This document shows positions 47,888-64,000 of a stretch of 64,000 nt of DNA, piece by piece. The position numbers were made by a program, and so were the translations under genes. The stretch is taken from the sequence record LC494302.1. The stretch is one strand, 5' to 3'. The notes below the pieces were generated by a model that ran no database searches, was not told the origin of the DNA, and saw only the letters and a program-made list of their open reading frames with translations. How positions within the stretch are numbered: position 1 is the stretch's first letter; each line of letters begins with the position of its first letter.

Positions 47888-50668
47888 ATGCTTGAGTTTT
47901 TTAATTCAGATACAATGCTTGGTATCACGCTAATTTACATGTTTGTATTCTTGTTTTATCATTCAATTGTAATTAGTCTTTGGTATTTTAAAAGGAAAGT
48001 TGTTTTTAAATTGTATTCGTATGATAATGTACTCTTAGTAGTATATAGCATTATACAAGGTGGGTTTATTTTATTTGGTGTGATGACATATGTGATTTAC
48101 ATGTTACAAATTGATAATACACCACACATTACACAATATGTTGTGTTTTCAGGACTAATCGTCTGGTTATTGGTGTGTACTCTGTATTTTATTATTAAAG
48201 CTCGTGATAACTTTAAATGGGGATTCTAATGTTAGAATTTTTTAAATCAGATACAATGATTAGTATTACTTTGATTTATCTGTTTGGTTTTTTCTTTTAT
48301 CATGCACTAGTTGTAGTACTATGGTATTTTAAAAAGAAAATTGTTTTTAAACTGTATCCAGTGAGGAATTCATCACTAGTTCTTTACACACTTGTTCAAG
48401 GTTTGTTTGCAATTGTTGGTCTTATGGCACACTTAATTTATTGTGCCAATCCTCACTTGAACTCAATCTCACAATATATTGTATTCTTTGGGTTGTTCAT
48501 TTGGTTAGTTGTATACTTAATCCATCTCATTATTCATGGTAGAGATAAAATTCGCGGAGACTTCTAATGTTTGAAGCTTATCTTGAGTTTTTAAGGAGTA
48601 GTCCAGTTGCACATTCACTTGCAGGGATTATTCTAACAACTTATGTATCATTTTGGGTAGTTATGTTTCTAGGATGGTATTTTAAACGACAATTCTATAA
48701 ACGTAATGGTGAAGATTTTATGAATTCTGTCATTAATCAATCGTTGTTTGCATCAACATTGATTGCATGTATTGTAGCAACACTCACAGGAAAGGTACTA
48801 CCAGCTTTTTCCGCAGTTTACGGCACACTTGGGATGATATGTTTAACTTTTATATTGACCATTAAAATTTGTTGTGTTATGATTGAACTTCGAAATAAGA
48901 TACCGGAGGAATGATGGAGTACTTTATTGATTTACTGCCGTGGTATATGAAAGTTAGTACCATGTACTATATTATTAGTGCTGGATTCTACTTTCTGATG
49001 TGGTTCTTTAAACGACCAATTTCAGTATTCATCGCTGATAACATGTTGCAATTAAAATTACACGCATGGTTTGGTATGGCGATGATTATGCCTATTATTC
49101 ACTACTCAATGATTAGTAGAGGTTTCCGTTCTAATGGTGAACCAATTGTATTAGTATTCTATTGGGGTTCAACTATTGCATATGTAAGTTTGTTGTTGTT
49201 CCCAGTCGTTCATAAGTTACGTGCTAAAGTTCCTGATGCGAGGTACTAATGGATATAGTAACATTGATTTACACGTTGTATTCATTCTATTTCATTATGT
49301 GTTGGGTTGGATTTTTATTTGTACTCAAGATGTTTGATTATGTTGAAAAACAGATAAAAGAATTTTGTATTCCTTTTATCGGTTCAACCATTATTAGTGT
49401 TTCTTGTGTGTATTTTTTGGTTTTTGATCCACCAGATAACACTGCAATGATTGACTTGATGTTACTACCAACAACTGTTACTTTTTTATGTAGTCTGATG
49501 CCGCCGATTAGCCGTGGACTAACAGAATTTAGACGCAATCAAAAGCGTAAACGAGGGATGTAATGGAAATTGCTCTTATTATCTTAACTGCTATGCTGTT
49601 TATTAGTACTGTGGTTATAATTGGTAAATTCTTTTGTGTATCATTTTTAGAAACGGTATACGATGAAATTGCTGATGATTATGAATTACAAGCCGGATTT
49701 TTCATTACGTATTGGCTTAGTTTATTTTGTCTAGTCATTGCTTGGATTTTACATATCTTTAAATGGGGTATGGTAGACGGTGATCCTATTATGGCAATTA
49801 TTGTTCTAGTGTTTGGTATCCTTGGTGGTGCAGTGCATAATCTAATGGTTATCTGGCAAACTGTTCAATATGTTTTGGTTCCCTATTTCGAAAAGATGCA
49901 CAGTACAATTAAAAAACGTAAACGAGGTTAGTATGAACGGGATAGAATTATCTTTCGTTGGTCAATTACTAGTAATGGCGTATACATTTATCTTCTCACT
50001 GAATGCATTCGTGTGCATTGGGAAGTACTTCCATAAGCGACCATTATCAAATATATATGATGTAATCCAAAAGAGATATAGTCCAGCATATACTGTGTTG
50101 GGTACAGTATTCAATTTTGGTTTTATTGTATTAATAATTGGACTGTTCACATCCTCTTTGAATACAATAACCTTCGGTCTTATGATATGTTCATTGGTAT
50201 TAGCCGTAATTATATGTTGTTTAGTACTGCACCTTGTGGTACTATTGTATATAAAGATCTCTGAAATCCACCAACGTTTGGGTATGAGGAAATAATATGA
50301 GTTACCGTGAGATATTTTCCATTATTTCAATTATTATGTTCAGTACTGGAACACTGGTATGGTTATTATACTTCTTCTGTATTAATCCAGTGTATAATAT
50401 GTTATGTAATATTAAATCAAGTGCCGGATATATCACTTTTATGGTCTTTATGGGATATTATTGTCTAAGCATTTTAGGTGTTGTTTTGGTTGTTATATTT
50501 GATGTGGGACCAAATAGTGATGGTATGGAAATACATGAATTAATAACCATGTTTGGATGTATGATACCAACAGCACTACTGTTTGTAGCTACTGGTAGTG
50601 GATTGATAAAATTATATAATTATTTAAAATCCATTCATAATTCCATTCATAATAAGCGTATGTCATAA
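47888..50668 (+). CDS. eight tandem ~105-125 aa 3-TM membrane paralogs (starts 47888, 48229, 48567, 48911, 49249, 49563, 49933, 50297)
   Basis: Coupled ORFs, three hydrophobic segments each, W[YF]FK[RK] or K[FY]F after TM1 in most, basic C-tails; first two begin MLEFF[NK]SDTM. Confidence 0.75.
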
Positions 50669-50710: not shown

Positions 50711-51373
50711 ATGATGAAATCAAAATTAGGTTTGTTTTATAAAAACTATTTTGTTAAACAACGTAAATTTATAAAAAAATATTTCTCTGGCGAGAAGTCT
50801 AGTCCTATAATCTTTAAAAGACCAAGTTATAATACTTACTTAGCTGGTGCTAAACAGTCTAAGAAATTTATTACTCTTTTACATAAAAACAAAATTAAAG
50901 CTTCTTATGTTGAAACGAGAAGAAACTCATCAATAACTCCTGGTGATTTTATTGAGTACGGATGTTTCAATATTAAGTACAATGATAATACATACTTTAT
51001 GGATATTGATTGTAATACATCCAATCTTTTTAACATTGTAGTAAATCCATTAAAACAATATAATGTTTATGGTGATTCTATTATCAAATTAATCAAAAAC
51101 AAAGATAGCTTTGATTTTGAAATAAATGTTTTAGATGATAATTTTGACGAAGTACCAGTAAACCCTGAAATCTGTGATATTTTAAACAGTTTAAAAGGTA
51201 GTACCTACACTATATCATCTGATTTAATGTTTCAGTACTCATTAATCCATAAAGATATTGAAAAGTATATTGAATGCTCCAGAATTTTGAATTTTCTCTA
51301 TGATGAATTTAAAAAGAGTTCTAAAATAACTGCATACACTTTGTACAATATTCCTAAAATGGTGAATCTTTAA
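50711..51373 (+). CDS. hypothetical protein, divergent EExFFQxST-motif family
   Basis: motif SSDLMFQYSLIHKDI. Confidence 0.6.
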   Translation: MMKSKLGLFYKNYFVKQRKFIKKYFSGEKSSPIIFKRPSYNTYLAGAKQSKKFITLLHKNKIKASYVETRRNSSITPGDFIEYGCFNIKYNDNTYFMDIDCNTSNLFNIVVNPLKQYNVYGDSIIKLIKNKDSFDFEINVLDDNFDEVPVNPEICDILNSLKGSTYTISSDLMFQYSLIHKDIEKYIECSRILNFLYDEFKKSSKITAYTLYNIPKMVNL

Positions 51374-51777
51374 CAAATACAGTACTGGCAACTCCACCGT
51401 CTGTAATATATTGTCCAGTACTGTAAATTTGTATACCATCGGTTAAGTAAGTTCTGTATAAAGTTGCTGTAACATATACGTTATTCATATTCATCTCTAT
51501 TGGTAGTACACATTTGGTATAGGCCGACACATCTGTTTGTGTACCTATACCCAATTGACCTGCGTTATCGCCTGTGTTATTACCAGTTGCGTAAACACCC
51601 AATGAAGTTATAATATGATTAGAAAAATATGAATAACCCAAACTCTTGAGATTCTCTACTGTACAACGTACCATCTGACATAAGGGCAAAAACTGTTGTA
51701 TCAGATGAAGCTATTTTTGTTACAGAAGGTTGTATGTTCTGTTTTGATGATGTGATAATTCTTCGAAAGGGTAGCAT
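51354..51777 (-). pseudogene. internally deleted, frame-broken MLPF-family RCC1-like gene
   Basis: GGAGG-ATG gives MLPFRRIITSSKQNIQPSVTKIASSDTTVFALMSDGTLYSR, then a frame change near 51650 to a C-terminus resembling that of 58787..59974. Confidence 0.7.
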
Positions 51778-51849
51778 TGTATCCTCCAAATGTAAATCGT
51801 TATTATATTTAGGACAAAAAAATGCCAGTACAAGGCACTGGCATAAAAT

Positions 51850-53019
51850 CTAAGCAGAAGGCATATCCTTCATCTTAATAAATGAAAATTGTGTACCAGT
51901 ATTTGTGGTTTGATCAGTAAAATATGAATTACTACCAGCCCAGTACAATTCATTATTAACTATACAATATATAACAGAACTCGAACTCTGTGAATACACA
52001 CGACTTATATTTGATGGTTCTACTCCAGTACTGAACTGAACCGAACCCAACTGTGAACTTGGTATCACATCAGTTGGTCTACCTAAACCATTAACACCAG
52101 CCCCACCACCACATGTATATACCCCAGTACTATCAGTTGATATATTAACATAACCATTTCCAGCATTTTCAAATAGTATTTCACTGGGAACAACACCAAA
52201 TCCTGTAAGATCTATTTTCCTGAATGTAGTATAAACCGTAGAACCGCCAACACCTCTTCCACCATAATCATTAGAACCAGCCATATAGATACTATATCCA
52301 GAACTTCCTAAACATAATAACTGTACGTTGTCATATAATATTTGCATAGATATAACGTTATCAGGAATACTCAATACCGTAAAAGTAGTTAAAGAAGAAC
52401 TTCCAATATTACTACCAACCGATGTTCCACATCTGTAGTACTTACCGCCCTTTATATAATGGAATGATGAACCACCTAATTTATGTGCTCCTATTGCACT
52501 TACCTCAGTATCTATGAGAATGGGAGATACAACTTTGTTATTAACACCTAACTCAGATCTACTGTTCATACCGAACCCATATAAACGACCATCTAACATC
52601 AATATTAGTGTACTACCTGATGTACCCGCTGATGTAAATTCTATATTCTTTATCTGTGACACGTCAATACCTACAAATAATGAAGTTACTTCAGTCCAGT
52701 TAACATATGAACCACTAGCCCCAAAATATCCACCCATGTATAGTCCGGCACAATATAACTTATTATCAACCGTCTTTATTAATGTACCGGATACACACGC
52801 CCAAAAATCATCAACTTCATAGGGTACATGTACCCAACCACCTAATACATCACTATCATTCCCTGTTCCTAATTTGTAGTTCGATCCAGAACCACGCATA
52901 TACATATTCCCTGTACTATAAAGTAATCCGACATGTAATTGACTACCATCCAATTTCTTTATTTCGGGAAGAGTTGGTTTAATATTTCCGTACTTTAACA
53001 TTCTTCCAAAAGGTAACAT
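51850..53019 (-). CDS. MLPF-tag RCC1/BLIP-II-like repeat protein (389 aa)
   Basis: Start MLPFGRMLKYGNI after GGAGG; repeats LYGFGMNSRSELG, YMAGSNDYGGRG. Confidence 0.8.
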   Translation of the reverse strand: MLPFGRMLKYGNIKPTLPEIKKLDGSQLHVGLLYSTGNMYMRGSGSNYKLGTGNDSDVLGGWVHVPYEVDDFWACVSGTLIKTVDNKLYCAGLYMGGYFGASGSYVNWTEVTSLFVGIDVSQIKNIEFTSAGTSGSTLILMLDGRLYGFGMNSRSELGVNNKVVSPILIDTEVSAIGAHKLGGSSFHYIKGGKYYRCGTSVGSNIGSSSLTTFTVLSIPDNVISMQILYDNVQLLCLGSSGYSIYMAGSNDYGGRGVGGSTVYTTFRKIDLTGFGVVPSEILFENAGNGYVNISTDSTGVYTCGGGAGVNGLGRPTDVIPSSQLGSVQFSTGVEPSNISRVYSQSSSSVIYCIVNNELYWAGSNSYFTDQTTNTGTQFSFIKMKDMPSA

Positions 53020-53083
53020 AATTCCTCCTTTATTCATTATACTATATTTAATACAAATAAGAAAGCCAGTACAAAGTACTGGC
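53020..53083 (-). repeat. intergenic cassette (hairpin + TAAATATAGTATAA + GGAGG); copies also at 55398-55462, 56682-56747, 57906-57970, 58716-58779, 59975-60039, 61195-61259, 62406-62469
   Basis: Near-identical ~64 bp unit GCCAGTA..TACTGGC-(AT)TTCTT[AT]TTTGTATTAAATATAGTATAA..AATAA[AG]GGAGG. Confidence 0.9.
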
Positions 53084-53097
53084 ATAGTTTTATAGTA

Positions 53098-54207
53098 TTA
53101 TTTCGGCATTGTAATTGCAGACCATGAGTTCGTGGTAATAGGACCTGGTACATACAAAAAAGAACCACAAGCATAAATTTGATTATTACCATCAAATACT
53201 ATACTAAAATGTGCACATGTGTATAATGATGATTTTTCTGGGTTGTAATTATCTAAAGTTAGTGTATTGGTGAATCTACTCAAACCACCTCCCGAACCAT
53301 TTCTACCAAATTCACCAGTACTGTATATCTTTCCTTCGGTTGTTGCGTACATATTAACATATGAAGTCGCACTTGATTTTGATATTTTATGTATCTTACT
53401 ATCAATAGTAGTGGAGTTAAATGCAAATGGATATACTTGTGTGTTCGTTGTAATACCGTTACCAAGTTGACCAATATACTGCCAACCTGCGTTGTATATA
53501 TTGCTGGCTGAATAAGCAAGAGTACCAGTACTGTTACCACCAAATAGTTTAACACTTGTTAACCTGCTTACTAGTGTAGTATACTGTCCTGGACTTACGC
53601 CAAGTGAACCATACCCACTGCTCCCGCAACCGAGAAGTTCATTATTTGATGTTAATATTAATGTGTTATTCTGTGTACCCAATATATCAAGAACTGTATT
53701 AGCTCCGGTATTAATAACTGAAACAAAAGTACTCTGAGCCGTGGAATACCCACCACCGAGTGAATAGTTACCATTCATGCCTCTACCATAAACAATCGAA
53801 CCACTAGCATCAACGTAGTGCATTGTATCTGCACCAATTGATATCATTTTAATATTAGATATATGTGGAAATGAAGAAGTAACATTCAAACCACCCAACG
53901 GAATCATAGTATTTCCTGTGCCTAATTGTGTGGTAACTCCATGCATTATGAATTCTTCACCCTTGAGATAAAGAATATTGTACGCACCAGCCCATGCATC
54001 AGTAACACCTTCTGAAATTAATATCCAAGTATTTCTTGTTGCTGTATTTTCAACGTTTAACTGCAAATACGTATTAACCCCACAACCATAAAGTGAGCCA
54101 TCGCCATAGAGGACGTACAAATTATCAAGACCGCACAGTACTTTCTTTATCTTTGGAGCTTCAGGTGCAATATTTCCGTACTTAACCATTCTAGCAAAAG
54201 GTAACAT
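53098..54207 (-). CDS. MLPF-tag RCC1-like repeat protein (369 aa)
   Basis: MLPFARMVKYGNI; LYGCGVNTYLQL, YGRGMNGNYSLG, AGWQYIGQLG. Confidence 0.8.
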   Translation of the reverse strand: MLPFARMVKYGNIAPEAPKIKKVLCGLDNLYVLYGDGSLYGCGVNTYLQLNVENTATRNTWILISEGVTDAWAGAYNILYLKGEEFIMHGVTTQLGTGNTMIPLGGLNVTSSFPHISNIKMISIGADTMHYVDASGSIVYGRGMNGNYSLGGGYSTAQSTFVSVINTGANTVLDILGTQNNTLILTSNNELLGCGSSGYGSLGVSPGQYTTLVSRLTSVKLFGGNSTGTLAYSASNIYNAGWQYIGQLGNGITTNTQVYPFAFNSTTIDSKIHKISKSSATSYVNMYATTEGKIYSTGEFGRNGSGGGLSRFTNTLTLDNYNPEKSSLYTCAHFSIVFDGNNQIYACGSFLYVPGPITTNSWSAITMPK

Positions 54208-54217
54208 AAATTCCTCC

Positions 54218-55397
54218 TTAAATTTGTGGCAATTGGTATTCAGTTAAAGTCCATGTACCAACAACTGTCCCTACTGGAGACATACCAGTGTAGTATAATT
54301 TCCCATTCACATATGCAAATAATGCATTGTCATTCGCAGCAACCAACGATGTTGACGGATCATAAACTACAGAATTTGGAAATTGTGCTTGGACGAAAAT
54401 TGAAGCATTATTAGATGAATTGTTACCAAGCTGTCCATAATTATTATACCCTGTTCCAAAAATACGACTTCCATTTCTATATAATAATCCCCTAGGATTT
54501 TGTGAATATGTTTGTATAAATTCAAAATCGGAAACATTAGTTAATTGTAAATAAGTACTTTGTGGCGTTAAAGATATCTTATTAGTATTAGATAGAACAC
54601 CATTTCCTAATTGTCCGTGAATTTTGTGACCCTACACCATATAGCGGATAAGTATTATCTACATTAAGAACTATACCCAACATATTGTTATATGAAATTA
54701 TATCAACGGGGTACTGGCCTGTAGGAAAACTATACTTTGTCCAACTCGTCAAAGTATCAGTAGCAGAACCAGTTAACAATGTACCAGTACTAGTTTTACC
54801 ACATCGCCATACTGAATTATCATTTTTAATTATCCAAGTCGGACTATTGAAAAATGAACTAACCTTTTTAACATTAATATTAACCTGTGTAAATGATGTA
54901 AGTGTAGATGAACTACTACCCAACTCATAGGTCGAATTATCACCTATTGCGTAAAGAACACTATCATTTGTTAGTAAAAACATATTACGAACATTTGGAT
55001 ATATCTCCTTGATATTATCCACATTAAAACCTGAAAAATAAGACGTACAATCAACAAATGTAGTACTTTGAACTGCACTAGATGTACCAGTCCAAAGGTT
55101 CCAACCTGCATAATAAAATTTATTATCATTGGTCTGAACTAAGCTATATGAAGCATTCCTTGTGCACCAAAAATTTTTCACATTTTGCATTAAGCGAACC
55201 CATTTGGTCTGTGTCGTTGTATTTCCAAGACCGAATATACCAGCATTGTTACCGCCAATACCCCACAAATCACCGTTCTTATACAGAATCATCAATGTGT
55301 TGTTGGTAAAAGCCGATGGTGCTTGCATTTTAATTACACTAGATTCATATATAGGTGCTATATTCCCGTACTTAACCATTCTTGCAAAAGGTAACAT
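54218..55397 (-). pseudogene. MLPF-tag RCC1-like gene with single-base frameshift at about 54620
   Basis: Deleting one T in CAAAATTCACGGA restores QNHGQLGNG and an open frame to TAA at 54218 (392 aa). Confidence 0.75.
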
Positions 55398-55505
55398 AAA
55401 TCCCTCCTTTATTCATTATACTATATTTAATACAAAAAGAAATGCCAGTATCAAGTACTGGCATTATGTTAATTAATAGTGTCTTTCTAAACACATTTCG
55501 TGCCT

Positions 55506-56681
55506 TTATTCAGGTAGTACCAATTTCTTCATTGTAACTTGTTGTGTACCTGGACTCTGTTCCTGAAACATAGACCCGTTACCACACCAGTACACCTCAT
55601 TAGTCCCCACTAACGCGTATAACACACCAGAACCACCTTGTACTGAAAATGCATTAACATCTGGTGCAACATCCATATCCTCATATTGTACCTGGTGGTA
55701 ATAAGATCTTTCTGATGCAGTAGTAACAGGCCAACCAAGAGGAACACCACTACCACATGTATAAAGTTTACCATTCTGTGTCATTGCCATTATAAAATAA
55801 TTCAAACTGTGATTGTTCATCGACCCAGCATCTGGTATAATACCACTAATTTCGGGAGTAGCACTAAATGGACTCATTGTAACCTTCGTGTCTCCATACC
55901 CAATTCCTAAACAATAATCAGTGTTTATCCCAGCAGTATATACTCTAATATTACCCTTATTCGATGTAAGTACTGAAGTCGTCAAATTAGTACATGAAAT
56001 ACCAATAACTGTTCCAGATATATCAGTACTTACTGTAAATGTGGATAGTTTAGATGCACTTGTACCTAGGTTATAACTTGCGTTATTACCACATCTGTAA
56101 TATTGACCATTTTTAACATAATGTAAAGCACCACCAAAGTGTGTACCAGCAATCATAGTAACACCAGTATCAATCTTAATCGGTGTCGCTTTTGCACCAG
56201 AAACACCCAGTTCACCTCCAGTATTACTACCTATCCCGTATAAATCACCATTGCTTAACATAATTAATAAAGTACCATTTGAAGCGACAGTCTCAGTAGA
56301 AGCTATATCTTGAACTGTAGTAAGGCTTGGTATTGTAGACAATATTGATGTAATATTTGTCCATCCTGGAACAGGCGATTTGACCACACCAAGGTATCCC
56401 ATTTGTCCTGCTAAGTAAAATTCTCCTTCAGTCGTAAGTATAATGGTCCCTGCGGATAAACACCAAACATTAGCAACTTTATATGGACACTGTATCCATC
56501 CATTTTGTAAATACGCAGTACTATCATTTCCTAGCCTATATTGTGCACCATTACCACGTAGATATAAATTGCCACTATCGAACAACATACCCACATGTGT
56601 TGTAGATGTAGCAATCTTCAGTACACCCGAAGGTGCTGGTTTAACATTCCCGTACTTAACCATTCTTGCAAAAGGTAACAT
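55506..56681 (-). CDS. MLPF-tag RCC1-like repeat protein (391 aa)
   Basis: MLPFARMVKYGNV; closest in sequence to 51850..53019. Confidence 0.8.
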   Translation of the reverse strand: MLPFARMVKYGNVKPAPSGVLKIATSTTHVGMLFDSGNLYLRGNGAQYRLGNDSTAYLQNGWIQCPYKVANVWCLSAGTIILTTEGEFYLAGQMGYLGVVKSPVPGWTNITSILSTIPSLTTVQDIASTETVASNGTLLIMLSNGDLYGIGSNTGGELGVSGAKATPIKIDTGVTMIAGTHFGGALHYVKNGQYYRCGNNASYNLGTSASKLSTFTVSTDISGTVIGISCTNLTTSVLTSNKGNIRVYTAGINTDYCLGIGYGDTKVTMSPFSATPEISGIIPDAGSMNNHSLNYFIMAMTQNGKLYTCGSGVPLGWPVTTASERSYYHQVQYEDMDVAPDVNAFSVQGGSGVLYALVGTNEVYWCGNGSMFQEQSPGTQQVTMKKLVLPE

Positions 56682-56753
56682 AAATTCCTCCTTTATTCAT
56701 TATACTATATTTAATACAAAAAGAAATGCCAGTACTTGAGTACTGGCTTTATG

Positions 56754-57905
56754 TCAATAAACATCCCAAGGTAATGGTGTCTTTCTAAACCCATACCTAG
56801 TTGCGTTCTGCCCATCTCCGGCAATGTATCTACCGGTCCCACACTGATATAATTCAGTACTGCTACATATCGCACCACCAATAGTACCACTACACCACTG
56901 TGTTATATTAGAATATAATATTGGTAAATCACTACATTTGGTATATAATGCAACAGTGGCAGCCCCGCTCGGACCACCAAACACACTTCGGTTCGAACCC
57001 GTGTAATATATGCCATCTGGACTCATAAATGCAGATGTATAAGTTGTACTGCAATCCACTGGACTTCTTATATTATTAAGATCGCTTGGGTATGCTCTAG
57101 CACCATATGTGTATACATTACCAGCAGTAGTAATACCATTACCTAACTGACCATCATTTTGTCCACCACATGTAACCAACGATGCAGTACCGGAAACAAT
57201 TGCAGTAGCATTATACGAAGTACCTATAGCAATAGAAGCACCCGCCCTTTGGGATGGGGTAGGAACTGCGGCTGCGTTCCCCTGACCTAATTCACCATTG
57301 ACATTTCTTCCCCATCCATATACCGAGGTGGTATCTAATTGACATAGTACTGTACCATAACTAAACGTATATCGTATATCTTTCACAGCCGATGGTAAAC
57401 CACTAACTTTAGTTGCAACACTAATAACTCCAGAAACACCAGTAACTCCAGCGTTTGCGTTCATATTACGTCCATATGCGTATAAAGAACCATCAGCAGT
57501 TTTAATATGCATCATGCCATCTGTGCAATATAATGCATCGATGCTATCCACTACAACCGCTCCCATACTAGACGTTATATCGTTCCACCCAAGCGTTGTA
57601 GTACTAGAAATTAAGTTATTTCCGGCGTAAAGTATTCTATTATCATTTGTAACAACTACAGTATAATTGGTAGTAACGCCAATTAATCTAACATTCTCAT
57701 GTATCTTAGACCACATTCCTATTGAATTTGTGTTAGCGTCCAGAAATCCCAACTGACCAGCGGTATTATATCCAATACCCCACACATCACCTTCACTGTC
57801 CAATAACACTTCATGTGAAAAGCCAATCTTAAAATCTTTTATTGTAGGAACTACTGGAACTGGTGCAATATTCCCGTACTTAACCATTCTTCCAAAAGGT
57901 AACAT
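56754..57905 (-). CDS. MLPF-tag RCC1-like repeat protein (383 aa)
   Basis: MLPFGRMVKYGNI; VWGIGYNTAGQLG, VYGWGRNVNGELG. Confidence 0.82.
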   Translation of the reverse strand: MLPFGRMVKYGNIAPVPVVPTIKDFKIGFSHEVLLDSEGDVWGIGYNTAGQLGFLDANTNSIGMWSKIHENVRLIGVTTNYTVVVTNDNRILYAGNNLISSTTTLGWNDITSSMGAVVVDSIDALYCTDGMMHIKTADGSLYAYGRNMNANAGVTGVSGVISVATKVSGLPSAVKDIRYTFSYGTVLCQLDTTSVYGWGRNVNGELGQGNAAAVPTPSQRAGASIAIGTSYNATAIVSGTASLVTCGGQNDGQLGNGITTAGNVYTYGARAYPSDLNNIRSPVDCSTTYTSAFMSPDGIYYTGSNRSVFGGPSGAATVALYTKCSDLPILYSNITQWCSGTIGGAICSSTELYQCGTGRYIAGDGQNATRYGFRKTPLPWDVY

Positions 57906-57977
57906 AATTCCCCTCCTTATTCATTATACTATATTTAATACAAATAAGAAAGCCAGTATCAAGTACTGGCCTATATT

Positions 57978-58715
57978 TTAGACTGAATTGTTAGGATAAT
58001 ATCTCCCACGTCCCCATATTATTCGCACAGCACCACCACCAGCAGCCGTATAAGAAAAATTATCCCATATACTACCACCACCACCATACATCTTACCAGC
58101 ACCACCACTACCAGCACCACCATTATATGAACCATCGTATCTACCGCCAATACCATTAGCACCTTGAACAATGATACCAGTACCACCACCCGTACCAATG
58201 AACGAGGTATTATAGAATGCACCACCACCACCGCCGCCGCCAGCACCATTTTCACCAGTGATTGCATCTCCGTTACCACCTTTACCAGTGTAGCCACCAG
58301 CACCACCACCAATGACTGCACCACCACTTACACCAGCGTTGCCCCCATTACCACCACCATCATTAATAGCGTTAGCAGCTTTCCCACCTAGTCCACCAAC
58401 CCTATATTCACCAGTGAAGCTAACACATAGTTTTTCAGTTCCACGATATAAACCGTTTTCAACTGCTGTAGTAGTGTTGGGATGTGTAAGAGAAACACTT
58501 AAGTACTCACCACTAGTAACCGGAATATTATTACGCCACGATAAGCCGCCACCAGCACCACGTTGACCACCCGGCGAAATAACACATACTGATATTTCGG
58601 TAACGCCAGCAGGAACTGTAAATTGTGTTGTTCCTATTGTCGTGATTAATTGTTCACCATCTGGCTTATATTCAATTTTATTCCCGTACTTTACCATTCT
58701 TCCAAAAGGTAACAT
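57978..58715 (-). CDS. MLPF-tag glycine-rich protein (fibre-like, not RCC1)
   Basis: MLPFGRMVKYGNK then TTQFTVPAGVTEISVCVISPGG and long GGxGG tracts ending GAVRIIW. Confidence 0.78.
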   Translation of the reverse strand: MLPFGRMVKYGNKIEYKPDGEQLITTIGTTQFTVPAGVTEISVCVISPGGQRGAGGGLSWRNNIPVTSGEYLSVSLTHPNTTTAVENGLYRGTEKLCVSFTGEYRVGGLGGKAANAINDGGGNGGNAGVSGGAVIGGGAGGYTGKGGNGDAITGENGAGGGGGGGAFYNTSFIGTGGGTGIIVQGANGIGGRYDGSYNGGAGSGGAGKMYGGGGSIWDNFSYTAAGGGAVRIIWGRGRYYPNNSV

Positions 58716-58786
58716 ACTTCCTCCTTTATTCATTATACTATATTTAATACAAATAAGAAAGCCAGTACTCAGTACTGGCTATTATA

Positions 58787-59974
58787 TTATAATTGTCGGG
58801 GTGTATCTAGTACATATCTAGTTGTACTAGGACCACCATCATCATAAGTTCCGGTTGAATATATATTTTTCATATCAGTTAGAAATGTACGATATGAACC
58901 TCTATATATTTTTATTTTATCATACATAGAATATGTTATTTGTGTAGGCATTGGACATGCAGTAAACTTACCAACAGTTGCACTAGTACCAATACCCAAT
59001 GAACCAGCATAACTACTGGCATTTAAACCAGTTGCATATACACCAGTACTCGTAATTAGTATACTAGATTGTGGTGGGTATCCAGTATGAATTGAATACA
59101 AAGTACCGGGTGGTAACGTCGTACTGTTATTTCCTAAAACTCCATTAACAGAGCTAGATGTAGTGTTATTTCCCCATGCCCCATTATTAGCTAACCCACC
59201 GACAAGGAACTGACGTGCTCCTGTATTTGGATTTTCAACTAAAGCACTTACTGCACCAGTTGAGCATCCTGTGTATTGTAACGTTTTTGTGTATGTTGTA
59301 TTTGGTTGATATAAAGTATATTGATTATATGAAGTCCATGTAGTCGCGGAACTTATACCGGATGTAACACCACCAATATATAAATTATTTTGTTTATCAA
59401 ACAACAATACACAGTTATTTGTTGACTGTATTTGTGCAATATCAACATTAGGTGTGACCGCTTTTACAAATGAACCATCGGTTATTTCATAAGTAGTTCC
59501 CGTTCCATCGGCGAATTGTCTAGCACTGTTCCACCCTGTACTCCATATTGTATTATTGTCCATTAAGAAAGTAAACCACGTAGTACCTCCATACATCTGT
59601 TTAATTGAAGTACTTGAACTTTGTGTGTACAAATTTTGAATATATTGGTTATAACTTAAAAACGTAGTAGTACTAGTTGATAAACCAATATGACTACCAT
59701 ATCCACAGTAATAATAATTTGAGTCATTGTCTTTTACTAATAAAGTTCCTTGTGTAAGCCAGCAATCGTTAACGTTTTCTCTAATTAATGTCCATGATTT
59801 TAATGCAGTGTTGTTTCCTCTACCGAATTTCCCAAAACTATTATTCCCACGTGCATATAGTTGACCATCCGTATACAGAACCACAACATCTAAATCAGTT
59901 GGGATTATTTTCTTAATTTGAAGTGGTACTGGGGCAATATTCCCATAATTCATCATTCTTGCAAAAGGTAACAT
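58787..59974 (-). CDS. MLPF-tag RCC1-like repeat protein (395 aa)
   Basis: MLPFARMMNYGNI; LYARGNNSFGKFG. Confidence 0.8.
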   Translation of the reverse strand: MLPFARMMNYGNIAPVPLQIKKIIPTDLDVVVLYTDGQLYARGNNSFGKFGRGNNTALKSWTLIRENVNDCWLTQGTLLVKDNDSNYYYCGYGSHIGLSTSTTTFLSYNQYIQNLYTQSSSTSIKQMYGGTTWFTFLMDNNTIWSTGWNSARQFADGTGTTYEITDGSFVKAVTPNVDIAQIQSTNNCVLLFDKQNNLYIGGVTSGISSATTWTSYNQYTLYQPNTTYTKTLQYTGCSTGAVSALVENPNTGARQFLVGGLANNGAWGNNTTSSSVNGVLGNNSTTLPPGTLYSIHTGYPPQSSILITSTGVYATGLNASSYAGSLGIGTSATVGKFTACPMPTQITYSMYDKIKIYRGSYRTFLTDMKNIYSTGTYDDGGPSTTRYVLDTPRQL

Positions 59975-60045
59975 AAATTCCTCCTTTATTCATTATACTA
60001 TATTTAATACAAATAAGAAAGCCAGTATCAAGTACTGGCATTAAA

Positions 60046-61194
60046 TCATTGTATAAATGACATATCAACTTCTGTATAACTAAGAATGTTTTGTCCAGCA
60101 ATTCCCCCCATTACTACCATAGCATACCCACAATAATATAATTGCTCAGTGTCCGTAAGTATAAGTGAACCAGATGGAGTGCGTACCAAATTACACGAAC
60201 TATTAAACGAAGTATACGAAGGAGTATATGAGTACTGATTAATATTATTACCAACACCTAATTGACCAAATCCATTCGACCCAGATGCGTATAGAACTTC
60301 ATCACCTTTAGCTATATGTGATGCCATGTTACTAACACACGTATATAGAGTATAAACTCCTGAACTCAATAATGTCGGAGTTTTGTATTGTATATCGGTA
60401 GATGAAGAAGTACCACCTGTGCCAAATTCGTTCCCGTATTGTGCACCGAACTGTTTACCACAAGCGTACAAATTATTATCCGATTTAATAAAAAATGTAC
60501 TTTGATAACTTACATCAAAATCTATAACATCCGAAGCAATCATCGTCACCCCAGTAATAGAAGTTTGATTACCTGTACCTAACTGATAGTAATAGTTAAA
60601 ACCACAACCCCATAAAGTATTATCTTCTTTTAGGTATATGTTACCAACTGCCTTTTTAACCGAAGTTATAGTATCTACCCTTTTGAATGTGTTAAAAGAA
60701 TTAATGTTTGTACCATCACCAAATGATGATAGGTTCGAGTTATTGTTAACTCCACAACAATACAACGTACCATCGTTTGTTATCAAATTCACCTTCATAT
60801 CATTAAAACTACTCATGTATTTTATATCAGAAACATTAATACCACCTGATGTTATCCACGTAGTACAGTCCGTCCACAAAGTTTTTGTATCAGTTACACC
60901 AGTGAATGCCTTCGTGTTACCAGTGATAAAAACTTTTCCAGTACCTTTCTCTTCATACAATTGACAACTACTACTGTTATCTTCCAATAGAACTCGTTTA
61001 ACATTCTCCGCACAAAGAATAAATTTACTCGATGCTACACCTGTACCAGTACCCCAATTCGTCGAAGAAGATGCATACAACTTATTAGTATAAGTATCAT
61101 GAAGATACATAGAATCACTTGAATATATTTTAAAACGCCTATCCTTACCAGGGGCAATATTCCCATAATTCATCATTCTTACAAAAGGTAACAT
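60046..61194 (-). CDS. MLPF-tag RCC1-like repeat protein (382 aa)
   Basis: MLPFVRMMNYGNI; LWGCGFNYYYQLG, LYASGSNGFGQLG. Confidence 0.82.
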   Translation of the reverse strand: MLPFVRMMNYGNIAPGKDRRFKIYSSDSMYLHDTYTNKLYASSSTNWGTGTGVASSKFILCAENVKRVLLEDNSSSCQLYEEKGTGKVFITGNTKAFTGVTDTKTLWTDCTTWITSGGINVSDIKYMSSFNDMKVNLITNDGTLYCCGVNNNSNLSSFGDGTNINSFNTFKRVDTITSVKKAVGNIYLKEDNTLWGCGFNYYYQLGTGNQTSITGVTMIASDVIDFDVSYQSTFFIKSDNNLYACGKQFGAQYGNEFGTGGTSSSTDIQYKTPTLLSSGVYTLYTCVSNMASHIAKGDEVLYASGSNGFGQLGVGNNINQYSYTPSYTSFNSSCNLVRTPSGSLILTDTEQLYYCGYAMVVMGGIAGQNILSYTEVDMSFIQ

Positions 61195-61265
61195 ATTTCC
61201 CTCCTTTATTCATTATACTATATTTAATACAAATAAGAAAGCCAGTACAGTGTACTGGCATTATA

Positions 61266-62405
61266 TTATTTCCACGGTAGAAGTGAATCAGGAACCCTTG
61301 TTGGTACAGTAGTTGAAGACATTCCAGTAAGATTGGGTACACCACATGTGTATAAATTATTATATTCGTCAACTAACATCGTATAAGAATAGCTCTTACA
61401 AAAACTACTAAGATTACTACCTTCTAATGCAGTAAGATCCATTTCAGCGAATGATGTTATATACATATCAGTTGTACCAATACCACATTGACCATTTGAA
61501 TTAAGGCCACATGAAAATAACTTATTATTATTATTAATTATACAGGATGGTCCGGTAAGGTTTGTCCCAAGCTCACCCACCAACTCCACTTCTCCTTGGA
61601 ATGATAAATTTGGAATTAATGTACTCATTGGGGCTACTGACCTATTTCCTGTACCTGCTTGTCCATAGTCGTTAATAGATGCAACTTTAACATTACCATC
61701 ATTAAGAAATATATAAGAAGTTTCATTTGTATTGACTGCTTTAATTGCATTACTAATCGAAGTATCTTGTGTAAATGTGAGCAAGTTTTGTGTCGTCGTT
61801 CCTGATACAAACGTTCTACCTGCATACCAATATGAACCATCATTTAGTACTAATCCAGTACTATATATTGCACAACCAGCACTGATAACATTTTCTATTG
61901 TACTATAGGTGAATCGTGAAACGCTTGAAGTTGATCCATTCCCAAAAACACCACCAGTACCAGCACCACAGTAGAACCACTTTCCATTTTTTAAAAATAC
62001 ACGCATACACGAAGATATCACAACACTATCAATATCATCTGCACTGACACCGAAATCAGTAAAGTTCTGTGTTATATCAACCCAAACGCCGTTAGTGTTT
62101 GAAGATAGTATTGGAATAACAGTACGTCTACCAGTGTACCAAATAGTACCATCTTTCTTTATAGCAATTGTTCCTTGTACCCCACCCCAATATCGTGTAA
62201 CATTTGAGTTGACAAGAGTCCATTCAGTTGAAGAGTCCAATGAACCATTACCACTTTGTCCATATGCTGAAGAACCAAACCAATATAGATTGCCATTTGT
62301 GTGTAAATAAAATTTGGCATCAGCAGAACATTGTAACCTGTTTTTAGGTAGAATCAGTTCAGGTGCGATATTCCCGTACTTAACCATTCTTGCAAAAGGT
62401 AACAT
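61266..62405 (-). CDS. MLPF-tag RCC1-like repeat protein (379 aa)
   Basis: True start MLPFARMVKYGNI at 62405; LYWFGSSAYGQSG, LFSCGLNSNGQCG. Confidence 0.82.
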   Translation of the reverse strand: MLPFARMVKYGNIAPELILPKNRLQCSADAKFYLHTNGNLYWFGSSAYGQSGNGSLDSSTEWTLVNSNVTRYWGGVQGTIAIKKDGTIWYTGRRTVIPILSSNTNGVWVDITQNFTDFGVSADDIDSVVISSCMRVFLKNGKWFYCGAGTGGVFGNGSTSSVSRFTYSTIENVISAGCAIYSTGLVLNDGSYWYAGRTFVSGTTTQNLLTFTQDTSISNAIKAVNTNETSYIFLNDGNVKVASINDYGQAGTGNRSVAPMSTLIPNLSFQGEVELVGELGTNLTGPSCIINNNNKLFSCGLNSNGQCGIGTTDMYITSFAEMDLTALEGSNLSSFCKSYSYTMLVDEYNNLYTCGVPNLTGMSSTTVPTRVPDSLLPWK

Positions 62406-62475
62406 ATTCCCTCCTTTATTTGTTATACTATATTTAATACAAATAAGAAAGCCAGTACTCTGTACTGGCATTATG

Positions 62476-63585
62476 TTATTTTGGTAAATCAATTTTAGTA
62501 AAGACTGCAACATCCTCGATTGCACCTGGAATGGCGTAATACGATCCAGTACTATACACATCTCCATTTTTGGTTAATATCGATGTCAAACCATCACTAA
62601 AAAGAACATCCCTAATCTCACTAACTTCAACGGGTAATTGTAAATTGGTAGCACTATATATAGCACCAGTTTGAGAATTGTTTAATCCCAAACCACGGTT
62701 CGCCCCAACACCCTTCTGATATGTACTAGTAATTACCATTTGTGTAGCAGTATTTAAGGCAGGTGAATTCGTCATAAACAACGGAGAACTATTAGGCAAA
62801 GTACTTAAAGGAACTGCACGGAATGTAGTCGTACCTGAACTAAGAAAGTTTGGAGTTTGACCACATACGAAATATGATGTACCATTATAGTAATTTAATG
62901 CATTACCACCAATGGCTGCATCGATTACACCAGAACTACGCAATCCCCAAGTGTTAATTTGTGTTTGGTTCCCCGTACCATGCTGCCCACTACTATTCCA
63001 TCCAGAACTATATAGCTTATTATCTAATGTAAGATACATACTATCATTCGCATTGGTCATTACTTTACGAACGTTCGTAGCACATTGAGTTAATGTGTAA
63101 ATTGATGATGAACCAATACCCAAAGAACCACGATATCCATTATCTCCTGCACCATAGAGTACTGAATTAGTGCTAAGTACAAATATTAAACCATTTGTAC
63201 ATACAATATTAGCAATTTCACTTACTGGTATAGCATTGGTAAACCAATTAGTTCTTTCAACTAATACAGTACTGTAAGAAGTAGTTGTAGAAGATGAGAA
63301 CCAGTACGTTTGACCTGATGTCCATATCGTATTATCATTTTTAATAATAACAAGTGTACGATCACCCACGAAAAAATTAGAAACATCTGCACTTACTAAT
63401 GTCCACGAAGACACCGTGTTGGTATTACCATTTCCAGATTCACCACCTTGATTTCTACCTATGTAATATAAATCATGTGAATCAGTCAATAAGAATTGGC
63501 CTTGGGTAGAAGCACCAACTTTAATTATTTTTTTAGGACCAGGGACAATATTTCCATACATAATCATTCTTCCAAAAGGTAACAT
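62476..63585 (-). CDS. MLPF-tag RCC1-like repeat protein (369 aa)
   Basis: MLPFGRMIMYGNI at 63585; LYSSGWNSSGQHG. Confidence 0.82.
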   Translation of the reverse strand: MLPFGRMIMYGNIVPGPKKIIKVGASTQGQFLLTDSHDLYYIGRNQGGESGNGNTNTVSSWTLVSADVSNFFVGDRTLVIIKNDNTIWTSGQTYWFSSSTTTSYSTVLVERTNWFTNAIPVSEIANIVCTNGLIFVLSTNSVLYGAGDNGYRGSLGIGSSSIYTLTQCATNVRKVMTNANDSMYLTLDNKLYSSGWNSSGQHGTGNQTQINTWGLRSSGVIDAAIGGNALNYYNGTSYFVCGQTPNFLSSGTTTFRAVPLSTLPNSSPLFMTNSPALNTATQMVITSTYQKGVGANRGLGLNNSQTGAIYSATNLQLPVEVSEIRDVLFSDGLTSILTKNGDVYSTGSYYAIPGAIEDVAVFTKIDLPK

Positions 63586-63593
63586 ATTCCCTC

Positions 63594-64000
63594 CTATTGT
63601 TGCCATAACTGCGATGGCATTAATGTTAGTGTAGTAATACTATAAGTGCCATCTGGCAATCTACCACCATTTCCATTCCAGCCACCACATGCATATAATT
63701 TATAATCTTTAGTAATTATTATGGTTCTGCTCCAATCTTTAGATGCCATAAGAACATTGTCATAACCACTACTTATTGCACTAAGATTAAAAATATTCCA
63801 AGTTCTAACTAATGTATTAGTTCCATTACCTTCTTGACCATATGAGTTAGCACCACTACTTCTAACATATGGTGCGTATTGTGCCATAGGTGCACCAATT
63901 GATGCATTTCCCATATTACTTGGACAAATAAAAGTACTGTACTTACTTACATCAACCGTGACCGATGTGTTCCTAATTGGTGTTAGCTGATTTACCGATG
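63594..64000 (-). CDS. C-terminal part of another RCC1-like paralog (runs off the window)
   Basis: Frame open to the window edge; VRSSGANSYGQEG, LYACGGW. Confidence 0.7.
   Translation of the reverse strand, partial: SVNQLTPIRNTSVTVDVSKYSTFICPSNMGNASIGAPMAQYAPYVRSSGANSYGQEGNGTNTLVRTWNIFNLSAISSGYDNVLMASKDWSRTIIITKDYKLYACGGWNGNGGRLPDGTYSITTLTLMPSQLWQQ

What the first reader, a model, noticed from the sequence alone, without database searches (positions are those of the whole stretch)
51354..64000. Array of at least 12 genes sharing an N-terminal MLPF tag on different bodies
Seen: ten genes start MLPF[AGV]RM[VLMI][KNM]YGN and a degraded eleventh starts MLPFRR. Ten bodies are highly diverged RCC1/BLIP-II-like repeat proteins rich in S/T/G/N/Y, but one (57978..58715) is an unrelated glycine-rich fibre-like protein with the same tag. 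The degraded copy keeps MLPF through synonymous changes (CTA CCC versus TTA CCT), which suggests protein-level constraint. Established: RCC1/BLIP-II repeats form beta-propeller binding surfaces. Inference: the tag is a plug-in signal that loads interchangeable binding modules onto a common virion site or export route, a combinatorial adhesin or inhibitor system.
Basis: partly seen in the sequence, partly recalled or inferred. Interest (0 to 1): 0.8.

Follow-up and report, generated by a model that had tools for sequence, protein, structure and literature searches.

The report
Virion address tag on phage modules
In a jumbo E. coli phage, a tandem array of otherwise unrelated binding proteins all begin with the same 12-residue peptide; in related phages, proteins carrying this peptide are the ones found in purified virus particles, so it looks like an undescribed address label for loading interchangeable accessory modules.

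Summary
The window is Escherichia phage SP27 (Asteriusvirus). On the minus strand of 51354-64000 there are ten genes with the quoted N-terminal peptide, one degraded copy, and one gene cut by the window end. The public record adds two more tagged starts.

Nine tagged bodies are 7-bladed RCC1-type propellers (21-32% identical). One is an unrelated glycine-rich beta domain.

The tag is not only DNA homogenisation. It recurs with other codons and no shared upstream DNA in Mimasvirus, Eneladusvirus, a Xanthomonas phage and uncultured 355-371 kb contigs. There it sits on Kelch propellers, ConA/LamG lectin domains, RCC1+Kelch fusions and glycine-rich domains.

Published virion proteomes contain 9 of 11 tagged CBB proteins (P=2e-8), 8 of 14 tagged phAPEC6 proteins (P=3e-5) and GAP32 gp001. 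AlphaFold leaves the tag outside both body folds.

Best reading: a fold-independent virion-docking peptide. I favour an outside site (fibre or decoration) over the inner body, but this is unproven.

In SP27-type phages the tag is also part of a roughly 110-bp terminator-promoter-RBS-tag junction. All six homology blocks between SP27 and 121Q end there.

I found no prior description of the tag. It is a new variant of a known kind.

The parts
51354..51777 (-). Remnant of an RCC1-type array gene with a degraded tag. The first four residues are kept with synonymous codons. It is broken by one large internal deletion and one change of frame.
51821..51844 (-). Terminator-like hairpin plus T-run upstream of the remnant (a diverged copy of the junction)
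51850..53019 (-). Tagged RCC1-type propeller gene (389 aa); tag codons at 52984-53019
   Evidence: orthologue phAPEC6 gp010 found in virions
53024..53083 (-). Junction cassette: hairpin 53065-53083 plus T-run, then conserved promoter-like box and ribosome-binding site at 53024-53049
53098..54207 (-). Tagged RCC1-type propeller gene (369 aa). It has no cassette upstream but keeps the tag (54172-54207).
   Evidence: orthologue phAPEC6 gp009 in virions
54208..55397 (-). Tagged RCC1-type gene broken by one frameshift, giving a shortened product. The orthologous shortened product (phAPEC6 gp007) is nevertheless in the virion proteome.
55403..55465 (-). Junction cassette (hairpin 55441-55465; conserved box 55403-55428)
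55506..56681 (-). Tagged RCC1-type propeller gene (391 aa)
   Evidence: orthologue phAPEC6 gp006 in virions
56687..56747 (-). Junction cassette (hairpin 56728-56747; box 56687-56712)
56754..57905 (-). Tagged RCC1-type propeller gene (383 aa). This one was modelled: a 7-bladed propeller with residues 1-20 outside the fold.
   Evidence: identical to phAPEC6 gp005, found in virions
57911..57972 (-). Junction cassette (hairpin 57950-57972; box 57911-57936)
57978..58715 (-). Tagged glycine-rich beta-domain gene (245 aa), unrelated to the propellers. It belongs to phrog_4474 and its relatives carry Pfam Gly_rich_2.
58720..58780 (-). Junction cassette (hairpin 58760-58780; box 58720-58745)
58787..59974 (-). 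Tagged RCC1-type propeller gene (395 aa)
59980..60039 (-). Junction cassette (hairpin 60021-60039; box 59980-60005)
60046..61194 (-). Tagged RCC1-type propeller gene (382 aa). Its best 121Q counterpart sits at another place in that array.
61200..61259 (-). Junction cassette (hairpin 61241-61259; box 61200-61225)
61266..62405 (-). Tagged RCC1-type propeller gene (379 aa). The mechanical ORF that starts at 62567 is an over-extension through the cassette.
62410..62469 (-). Junction cassette (hairpin 62451-62469; box 62410-62435, two mismatches)
62476..63585 (-). Tagged RCC1-type propeller gene (369 aa). It follows the upstream gene after 8 bases with no cassette, yet keeps the tag.
63594..64000 (-). 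3' part of a further tagged RCC1-type gene. Its start lies about 800 bases beyond the window end. One more tagged gene follows in the record.

Best explanation
The first 12 residues, followed by a proline-rich linker of about 10 residues, form a fold-independent docking peptide. It recruits whatever body follows it into the virion of this clade of Rak2-like jumbo phages. The bodies are an RCC1 propeller or a glycine-rich domain here, and Kelch propellers, ConA/LamG lectin domains or double propellers in relatives.

Shown:
- The peptide is conserved as protein across genera and across unrelated folds.
- It is predicted to lie outside the folded body.
- Proteins that carry it are strongly enriched in three published virion proteomes, including a shortened propeller.

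Inferred:
- The peptide binds a conserved virion component.
- My favoured site is external: the unassigned flexible fibres or decoration sites on capsid hexamers and on the sheath of 121Q-type particles, with the modules acting as accessory adhesin tips.

Second layer, in SP27-type phages: most genes are their own expression units (terminator hairpin, promoter-like box, ribosome-binding site, tag). This junction of about 110 bp is kept nearly identical at the DNA level. It is where homology blocks between related genomes begin and end. So it also serves as the recombination joint that adds, removes and reorders modules.
For: Conservation across genera:
- The tag recurs in GAP32 gp001 and gp002, CBB_144, 247, 536, 537 and 548-554, Yersinia phage fHe-Yen9-04 g527c-g531c, and Xanthomonas XaC1_556-558 as a variant.
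- It also occurs on uncultured contigs of 355-371 kb.
- In 57 tags outside Asteriusvirus, position 7 is aliphatic in 57, position 5 is Pro/Ser/Ala in 53, and positions 10-12 are Tyr 39, Gly 36, Asn 38. Pro codons are CCA 45, CCT 7, CCG 3, CCC 2, against CCT 12/12 in SP27.
- In those genomes the upstream 40 nt are 34-39% identical while the tag is 63-77% identical.

Bodies and structure:
- Bodies are RCC1, Kelch, Laminin_G_3, RCC1+Kelch and glycine-rich.
- The glycine-rich body exists without the tag in PVP-SE1 gp19 and about 115 of 120 relatives.
- AlphaFold: propeller pLDDT 87 with the first two 10-residue blocks at 49 and 65; glycine-rich body pLDDT 93 with residues 1-10 below 50.
- Residues 13-24 are 16.7% Pro against 2.6% in the rest of the protein.

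Virion proteomes:
- CBB: 9 of 11 tagged proteins among 55 detected of 554 ORFs, P=2.4e-8. All six detected proteins 'not present in GAP32' are tagged.
- phAPEC6: 8 of 14, P=2.9e-5, including the shortened gp007.
- GAP32 gp001 was identified by mass spectrometry.

Distribution:
- In 121Q all 11 pattern matches lie in the one array.
- True tags occur only on contigs of 348-378 kb.

For an outside site:
- The bodies have low charge, pI 5.1-9.2.
- Glycine-rich relatives are annotated as fibre, baseplate or tail proteins.
- The closest cellular RCC1 relatives carry Ig-like or T9SS sorting domains.
- There is no conserved processing motif after the tag.
- 121Q and phAPEC6 have unassigned fibres on capsid and sheath.

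Junction:
- The 26-mer occurs 8 times, only in the array, against 0 expected.
- There are 21 terminator-like sites against 5.3 expected.
- Same-residue codons in the tag are identical in 89% of pairs, including minority codons.
- All six SP27/121Q homology-block ends fall -50 to +76 nt from a gene start, and gene order differs.
Against: - No experiment locates any tagged protein on or in the particle, and no partner is known.
- Virion proteome lists also contain likely passengers (RecA-like protein, ssDNA-binding protein, thymidylate synthase). Presence in a list is weaker than structural membership.
- Two tagged CBB proteins and six tagged phAPEC6 proteins were not detected. Three of the latter are unannotated and so could not be searched for.
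- It is unknown whether the tag is still present on the mature protein.
- Low AlphaFold confidence at a terminus is common and the propeller alignment was shallow (18 sequences).
- Within SP27 the near-identical codons mean that the within-genome conservation by itself says nothing about protein function.
- Promoter and terminator activity of the junction is inferred from sequence only.
- These phages have T4-type head genes and an inner body of unknown composition, so an inside site is not excluded.
Confidence: 0.68

Rival explanations
1. The tag is a capsid-targeting sequence in the manner of the phage T4 internal proteins. It would bind the prohead core so that the modules are packed inside the head as inner-body material, and it may be removed afterwards.
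For: - T4 internal proteins use 10-19-residue N-terminal propeptides. The first 10 residues suffice for loading, they sit on diverged bodies, and the review suggests this as a general way to load varied proteins.
- These phages have T4-type head genes (protease, scaffold, portal, capsid protein) in the phAPEC6 table.
- They also have an inner body of unknown composition.
- The phAPEC6 authors proposed the RCC1-like proteins as inner-body candidates.
- The length and position of the tag fit.
Against: - There is no conserved [Leu/Ile]-x-Glu site at a fixed place after the tag: 2 of 12 in SP27 and 16 of 58 elsewhere. That this motif is the T4 protease's site is my own knowledge.
- The bodies are 24-43 kDa rigid beta folds of low charge, pI 5.1-9.2. 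They are unlike small basic internal proteins and are too wide to leave through a tail tube while folded (inference).
- The fold types are those of lectins and adhesins, and the glycine-rich relatives lie in fibre and tail proteins.
Confidence: 0.2
2. The tag has no protein function. It is conserved only because it is the 3' end of a repeated DNA cassette (promoter, RBS, initiation region) that is homogenised by recombination or selected at the RNA level.
For: - In SP27 the tag's 36 nt are 90% identical between paralogues.
- Same-residue codons are identical in 89% of pairs, with minority codons fixed: CCT 12/12, AAG 9/12, TAC 9/12.
- The tag abuts a cassette repeated 8 times.
Against: - Two SP27 genes (starts 54207 and 63585) keep the tag without the cassette.
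- In CBB, fHe-Yen9-04 and the uncultured contigs there is no shared upstream sequence (34-39% identity), codons differ, and yet the residues are kept.
- The tag tracks virion presence.
- No other gene in the window or in 121Q carries it.
Confidence: 0.04
3. The tag serves a role in the infected cell instead, such as localisation, export, chaperone recognition or controlled turnover. On this reading the virion proteome signals are carry-over of abundant late proteins.
For: - Virion lists include obvious non-structural passengers.
- The array lies next to tandem small membrane-protein genes in both SP27 and CBB.
- Peptide coverage of the phAPEC6 proteins is low, 3-17%.
Against: - Enrichment appears in two independent proteomes from different genera and laboratories' preparations (P=2e-8 and 3e-5).
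- CBB coverage reaches 24-51% for several tagged proteins.
- The peptide has no features of a Sec/Tat or lipoprotein signal. It is 12 residues long, has no hydrophobic core of the usual length and no Cys (read; inference).
Confidence: 0.07
4. The N-terminal peptide is simply part of the body fold, for example the strand that closes the propeller ring.
For: Many propellers close the ring with an N-terminal strand (general knowledge).
Against: - The same peptide precedes at least five unrelated folds.
- AlphaFold places it outside both modelled bodies, and the first strand starts at residue 22 or 20.
- The glycine-rich domain exists without it in most relatives.
Confidence: 0.01

Closest known systems
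Capsid targeting sequences of phage T4 internal proteins (IPI, IPII, IPIII, Alt)
   Same: Both are short N-terminal peptides (10-19 residues) shared by diverged proteins. The gene sets vary between close relatives. The peptide rather than the body decides incorporation into the particle.
   Different: - Here there is no conserved protease site after the peptide.
- The bodies are large, low-charge beta folds of lectin or propeller type.
- Location is unknown.
- No sequence likeness was tested, because no T4 sequence was fetched and none came back as a hit.
PeSL composite terminator/promoter motifs of T4-like phages
   Same: Both are a repeated intergenic stem-loop plus promoter-like element between variable genes. 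Both lie exactly where insertions, deletions and replacements between close relatives begin and end.
   Different: - Here the repeat runs on into the coding sequence and includes a protein-level tag.
- The transcription class is unknown.
- The relatives in other genera have the tag without any such repeat.
Conserved N-terminal anchor regions of exchangeable tail fibres, tailspikes and gp38-type tip adhesins
   Same: Both have a conserved N-terminal attachment part followed by a variable receptor-binding part, with several alternative modules per virion. The glycine-rich fold is shared with fibre and adhesin proteins (gp38 glycine-rich motifs are the subject of PMC3157838, seen).
   Different: Those anchors are folded domains of tens to hundreds of residues on trimeric fibres (my own knowledge). 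Here the shared part is 12 residues plus a linker on apparently monomeric globular bodies.
Cargo-loading peptides of encapsulins (own knowledge, not tested here)
   Same: Both are a short terminal peptide on unrelated cargo proteins, which in encapsulins docks to an HK97-fold shell.
   Different: - Encapsulin peptides are mostly C-terminal and load cargo inside a bacterial compartment.
- There is no evidence here for an inside site.
RCC1 / RCC1-like-domain propellers (UVR8, RPGR, HERC, RCC1)
   Same: The bodies share the 7-bladed propeller fold and repeat signature.
   Different: Nothing supports a role in chromosome or DNA condensation. The public annotation 'DNA condensation protein' is a name carried over from the fold. 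The bodies are not basic.

Membership tests
RCC1-like repeat beta-propeller | Repeat signature recognised by the Pfam RCC1 / RCC1_2 models above their cut-offs | tested here: met
   RCC1_2 scores 31.8-38.5 bits (cut-off 22) and RCC1 scores 30-36 bits (cut-off 21.7) in several paralogues. The others hit only the RCC1-like-domain model, below its cut-off.
RCC1-like repeat beta-propeller | Seven-bladed propeller fold | tested here: met
   AlphaFold model with pLDDT 87 and pTM 0.86. Foldseek matches UVR8, RPGR, HERC2 and RCC1 at E 1e-15 to 4e-22 with TM up to 0.77.
RCC1-like repeat beta-propeller | Chromatin or Ran-linked function (the basis of the 'chromosome condensation' name) | not testable with these tools
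   Only indirect evidence: pI 5.1-9.2 and low charge. The closest cellular relatives are surface or secreted-type proteins.
T4-type capsid targeting sequence | Short N-terminal peptide shared by diverged virion proteins | tested here: met
   virion presence
T4-type capsid targeting sequence | Removal by the prohead protease at a conserved site just after the peptide | tested here: not met
   A [Leu/Ile]-x-Glu motif within the first 30 residues occurs in 2 of 12 (SP27) and 16 of 58 (other genera), at no fixed position. Actual processing was not measured.
T4-type capsid targeting sequence | Location inside the head and ejection with the DNA | not testable with these tools
   An inner body exists in 121Q and phAPEC6 but its composition is unknown.
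PeSL-type terminator/promoter shuffling motif | Repeated intergenic stem-loop with T-run next to a promoter-like box | tested here: met
   Hairpins with the same 8-bp stem occur at nine junctions. There are 21 terminator-like sites against 5.3 expected. The 26-mer box occurs 8 times against 0 expected.
PeSL-type terminator/promoter shuffling motif | Sits at the ends of indels and replacements between close relatives | tested here: met
   All six SP27/121Q block ends lie within -50 to +76 nt of a gene start. Block ends (query 1628, 4000, 7326, 8697, 9914, 11125) also map to tags or cassettes.
PeSL-type terminator/promoter shuffling motif | Measured promoter and terminator activity; early class | not testable with these tools
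   No transcript data were available. The sigma-70 scan is at chance level: 63 found against 64.7 expected.
Gly_rich_2 (PF21722) glycine-rich domain | Direct match of the window protein to the Pfam model | tested here: not met
   No Pfam family even at E up to 1.
Gly_rich_2 (PF21722) glycine-rich domain | Homology to proteins that do match the model, and the same predicted fold | tested here: met
   Many hits at E 1e-16 to 1e-6 carry PF21722. BFVD matches are named glycine-rich domain proteins, E down to 1e-14 and TM up to 0.73.
   BLIP-II is not among the 50 best PDB matches. Inhibition is not testable here.
Folded N-terminal anchor domains of exchangeable tailspikes/fibres | Conserved N-terminal region forms a folded domain | tested here: not met
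   Conservation ends after about 12 residues. AlphaFold gives no confident structure before residue 20-22.

The most novel reading that the evidence does not exclude
The tag is the key of a plug-and-socket system peculiar to this clade of jumbo phages. A conserved socket on the hair-like fibres (capsid hexamer centres and sheath rings) would accept any protein that starts with the peptide. Each particle would then display a mixed set of a dozen or more lectin or propeller tips, and the set would be re-dealt between strains by recombination at the junction. That would be a combinatorial surface-adhesin display with no described equivalent among tailed phages.
Probability: 0.4. Interest if true: 0.85.

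Novelty: new variant of a known kind. Interest (0 to 1): 0.72.

Why it matters
- It gives a single, testable rule for a whole class of 'hypothetical' or misnamed 'DNA condensation' proteins in Rak2-like jumbo phages: a protein that starts with this peptide is an accessory virion protein.
- It links three unexplained published observations: tandem RCC1 arrays, the CBB-specific structural proteins, and the unassigned hairs and inner body of 121Q-type particles.
- It shows the same label on at least five folds, which is rare direct evidence for a portable targeting peptide in tailed phages outside T4.
- It shows that in one genus the label has been welded to a regulatory cassette that marks the recombination joints of the array.
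- For annotation, 12 residues are enough to flag such genes, including three left unannotated in phAPEC6.

Tried and rejected
- Propeller-closing strand idea: rejected, because the peptide sits on unrelated folds and outside the models.
- Prohead-protease site after the tag: no conserved motif.
- 'DNA condensation' function: no support from composition. The name comes from the fold.
- phAPEC6 peptide-level data, to see whether the N-terminus survives: no supplementary files are held.
- PDB profile search with the glycine-rich alignment: no hit.
- PDB Foldseek for the glycine-rich body: only weak matches to a cyanophage fibre and a mycobacteriophage tail tip, with TM below 0.3.
- Promoter box elsewhere in the window, to infer timing: found only in the array.
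- Literature search for the tag: no phage paper mentions it. Papers on 121Q, phAPEC6, CBB, Sharanji, fEgEco12, phiKp24, RaK2, Eneladusvirus and the jumbo-phage overview describe the paralogues or the hairs but not the shared N-terminus.
- Link between hairs and the tag in Eneladusvirus and RaK2: the papers give no usable morphology statement.
- Whether Alcyoneusvirus (RaK2, K64-1) lacks the tag: not tested directly. There were only no hits.

Full report
**Identity and anatomy**

The region matches Escherichia phage SP27 (LC494302.1, Asteriusvirus) at 100% identity. Window 51354-64000 is record 113354-126000. The array lies on the minus strand between plus-strand genes, and GC skew flips sign over it.

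Their starts are 53019, 54207, 55397, 56681, 57905, 58715, 59974, 61194, 62405 and 63585. A degraded start lies at 51777. No other reading frame in the 64 kb has the peptide. A degenerate DNA pattern for it gives 10 matches against 0.00 expected.

The gene at 63594 runs off the window. The record shows that it and one further gene also start with the tag. SP27 therefore has 12 tagged reading frames plus a remnant.

Two array genes are broken. The gene at 54208-55397 has one frameshift. The remnant at 51354-51777 has one large internal deletion and one change of frame.

**Bodies**

Nine in-window tagged bodies hit the RCC1, RCC1_2 and RCC1-like-domain models. They are only 21-32% identical to the reference paralogue, while the first 12 residues are nearly the same.

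The modelled paralogue (56754-57905) is a confident 7-bladed propeller (pLDDT 87, pTM 0.86). It is closest to UVR8, RPGR, HERC2 and RCC1, with E down to 4e-22. BLIP-II is not in the top 50.

The protein of 57978-58715 is unrelated to the propellers.
- It has no Pfam hit and belongs to phrog_4474.
- It is predicted as a compact beta domain with pLDDT 93.
- Many of its sequence relatives carry Pfam Gly_rich_2.
- Its predicted-structure relatives are 'glycine-rich domain' proteins, several of them inside proteins named tail fibre, baseplate component, tail repeat, Gp38, pectinesterase or ConA-like lectin.
- PDB matches are weak: a cyanophage fibre and a mycobacteriophage tail tip.

**DNA repeat or protein signal?**

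It is both, at different levels.

Inside SP27 the tag is the end of a repeated junction. The junction consists of a hairpin with a fixed 8-bp stem and T-run, a conserved 26-base box with a TATAAT-like element and a ribosome-binding site, and then the tag. Supporting counts:
- The box occurs 8 times, only in the array, against 0 expected.
- There are 21 terminator-like sites against 5.3 expected.
- The tag's 36 nt are 90% identical between paralogues.
- Same-residue codons are identical in 89% of pairs, and minority codons are fixed: CCT 12/12 against 30% usage in the bodies, and GGG 7/12 against 10%.

That pattern is DNA-level homogenisation. However, two SP27 genes keep the tag without the cassette. 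More importantly, the tag recurs in other genera:
- GAP32 gp001 and gp002.
- Five of five array genes of Yersinia phage fHe-Yen9-04.
- Three of three array genes in Xanthomonas phage XaC1, as a variant.
- Eleven CBB genes.
- Uncultured contigs of 355-371 kb.

In those genomes the upstream 40 nt are at background identity (34-39%) and codons differ (Pro CCA 45, CCT 7, CCG 3, CCC 2). Residues that my search did not require are still kept. Position 7 is aliphatic in 57/57. Position 5 is Pro/Ser/Ala in 53/57. Tyr, Gly and Asn occupy positions 10-12 in 39, 36 and 38 of 57. Columns 1-4 were required by that search and so are not independent evidence. The independent evidence for them is that every annotated gene of those arrays begins that way.

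**Fold independence**

In relatives the tag precedes several body types:
- Kelch propellers (CBB_550, 552, 554).
- ConA/LamG lectin domains (CBB_548, 551 and others).
- RCC1+Kelch double propellers of 667-676 aa.
- Glycine-rich domains (CBB_144 and others).
- Small bodies with no family.

Conversely, the glycine-rich body occurs without the tag in Salmonella phage PVP-SE1 gp19 and in about 115 of 120 database relatives.

AlphaFold leaves the tag unstructured and outside both bodies. Residues 13-24 are proline-rich: 16.7% against 2.6%.

**Link to the virion (published proteomics plus my mapping)**

- phAPEC6: Table 1 lists gp003, 005, 006, 007, 009, 010, 549 and 551. All are array genes. phAPEC6 has 14 full-length tagged frames, three of them unannotated. 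Eight of 14 among 62 detected of 551 gives P=2.9e-5.
- CBB: Table 4 and the text list CBB_144, 247, 536, 537, 548, 549, 551, 552 and 553. That is 9 of the 11 tagged genes, among 55 detected of 554, P=2.4e-8.
- The six CBB structural proteins that the authors singled out as absent from GAP32 are all tagged.
- GAP32 gp001 was also identified by mass spectrometry.
- The shortened product of the frameshifted gene is detected too, as phAPEC6 gp007. This fits incorporation that depends on the tag rather than on an intact body.

**Distribution**

Two collection scans found true tags (long ORF, ribosome-binding site) only on contigs of 348-378 kb. About 20 singletons elsewhere are short ORFs without a ribosome-binding site, and a similar number is expected by chance. 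In 121Q all 11 matches lie in the one array.

**Module shuffling**

All six SP27/121Q homology blocks end within -50 to +76 nt of a gene start, that is, in the junction or tag. Gene order also differs between the two phages. Block ends in the first database search map to the same places. This matches the PeSL terminator/promoter motifs that mediate shuffling in T4-like phages.

**Where does it dock?**

This is not settled. 121Q and phAPEC6 have two unassigned structures: flexible fibres (at hexamer centres and in rings on the sheath) and an inner body.

I favour an outside site for these reasons:
- The bodies are lectin, propeller and fibre-tip-type folds.
- They have low charge, pI 5.1-9.2.
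- The closest cellular RCC1 relatives carry Ig-like or T9SS sorting domains.
- A proline-rich tether follows the tag.
- There is no conserved [Leu/Ile]-x-Glu site after the tag.

The T4 capsid-targeting-sequence precedent keeps the inside reading alive at about 0.2.

**Novelty**

The paralogue arrays and their presence in virions are published. The annotation as 'DNA condensation' proteins is a carried-over name. I found no description of the shared N-terminal label or of its spread over unrelated folds and genera. The kind is known: targeting peptides, conserved anchors and PeSLs. This is a new variant of it.

- the roughly 10-residue targeting peptide of a T4 internal protein;
- a 7-residue motif of an animal virus's fibre tail;
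- an 8-base T4 late-promoter box.

The script printed alignment spans in paralogue coordinates. The approximate places of the two breaks could be inferred from those spans.

My notes contain motif shorthand for the tag. No repaired, consensus or joined sequence was built or saved.

Noticed in passing
window 48911-50668 (+): Five tandem genes for small multi-pass membrane proteins (104-141 aa) lie just beside the array. CBB has the same neighbourhood: 'putative membrane protein' genes among CBB_539-547 lie next to the tagged genes CBB_548-554.
   Followed up: partly
proteins P0005-P0036 and P0061; L007 4998-5840: Relatives of the glycine-rich body outside the Rak2-like phages often begin with a different short shared N-terminus: Met, then Leu/Ile/Phe, Glu, Leu/Met/Thr, Leu/Met. 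This may be another lineage's label. Within the 10 kb fetched around PVP-SE1 gp19, only gp19 has it.
   Followed up: partly
L002 (phAPEC6), minus-strand starts 12361, 13623 and 17252; gp002: Three full-length tagged ORFs are unannotated in the phAPEC6 record, so they could not have been found by its proteomics. gp002 is annotated with a start upstream of the tag. The ORF listing makes the same over-extension through the cassette in the window, for example the 433-aa ORF ending at 62567.
   Followed up: yes
L043 (121Q array): The 121Q counterpart of the window gene starting at 56681 is cut short to a small ORF. Breakage within the array therefore differs between close relatives.
   Followed up: no
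L003, L023, L025 (Eneladusvirus-like contigs): Two sub-types of the tag coexist in one array. One is like SP27's, with Tyr-Gly-Asn at positions 10-12. The other has Ile-Ile-Ser-Asn-Thr-Asn after the first five residues. This hints at two docking sites or two partners.
   Followed up: partly
L021 140-2161, L047 1903-3933, L025 (667-aa ORF): Tagged proteins of 667-676 aa are fusions of an RCC1-type and a Kelch-type propeller.
   Followed up: yes
L009 (SP27 record about 154000-160000): There is a long run of about 70-aa genes, back to back and overlapping. This is probably the large tandem array that Hua et al. mention for 121Q. It is unrelated to the tag, with no match to the tag pattern.
   Followed up: no
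window junction hairpins (e.g. 53065-53083, 56728-56747, 61241-61259): The 8-bp stems are identical between copies while the 3-5-base loops differ. Each hairpin also scores as terminator-like on the opposite strand.
   Followed up: no
window 50711-51373 (+) and 51354-51777 (-): The plus-strand gene (phrog_34359, unknown function) overlaps the 3' end of the remnant by 20 bases. The array therefore abuts convergent transcription with no spacer.
   Followed up: no
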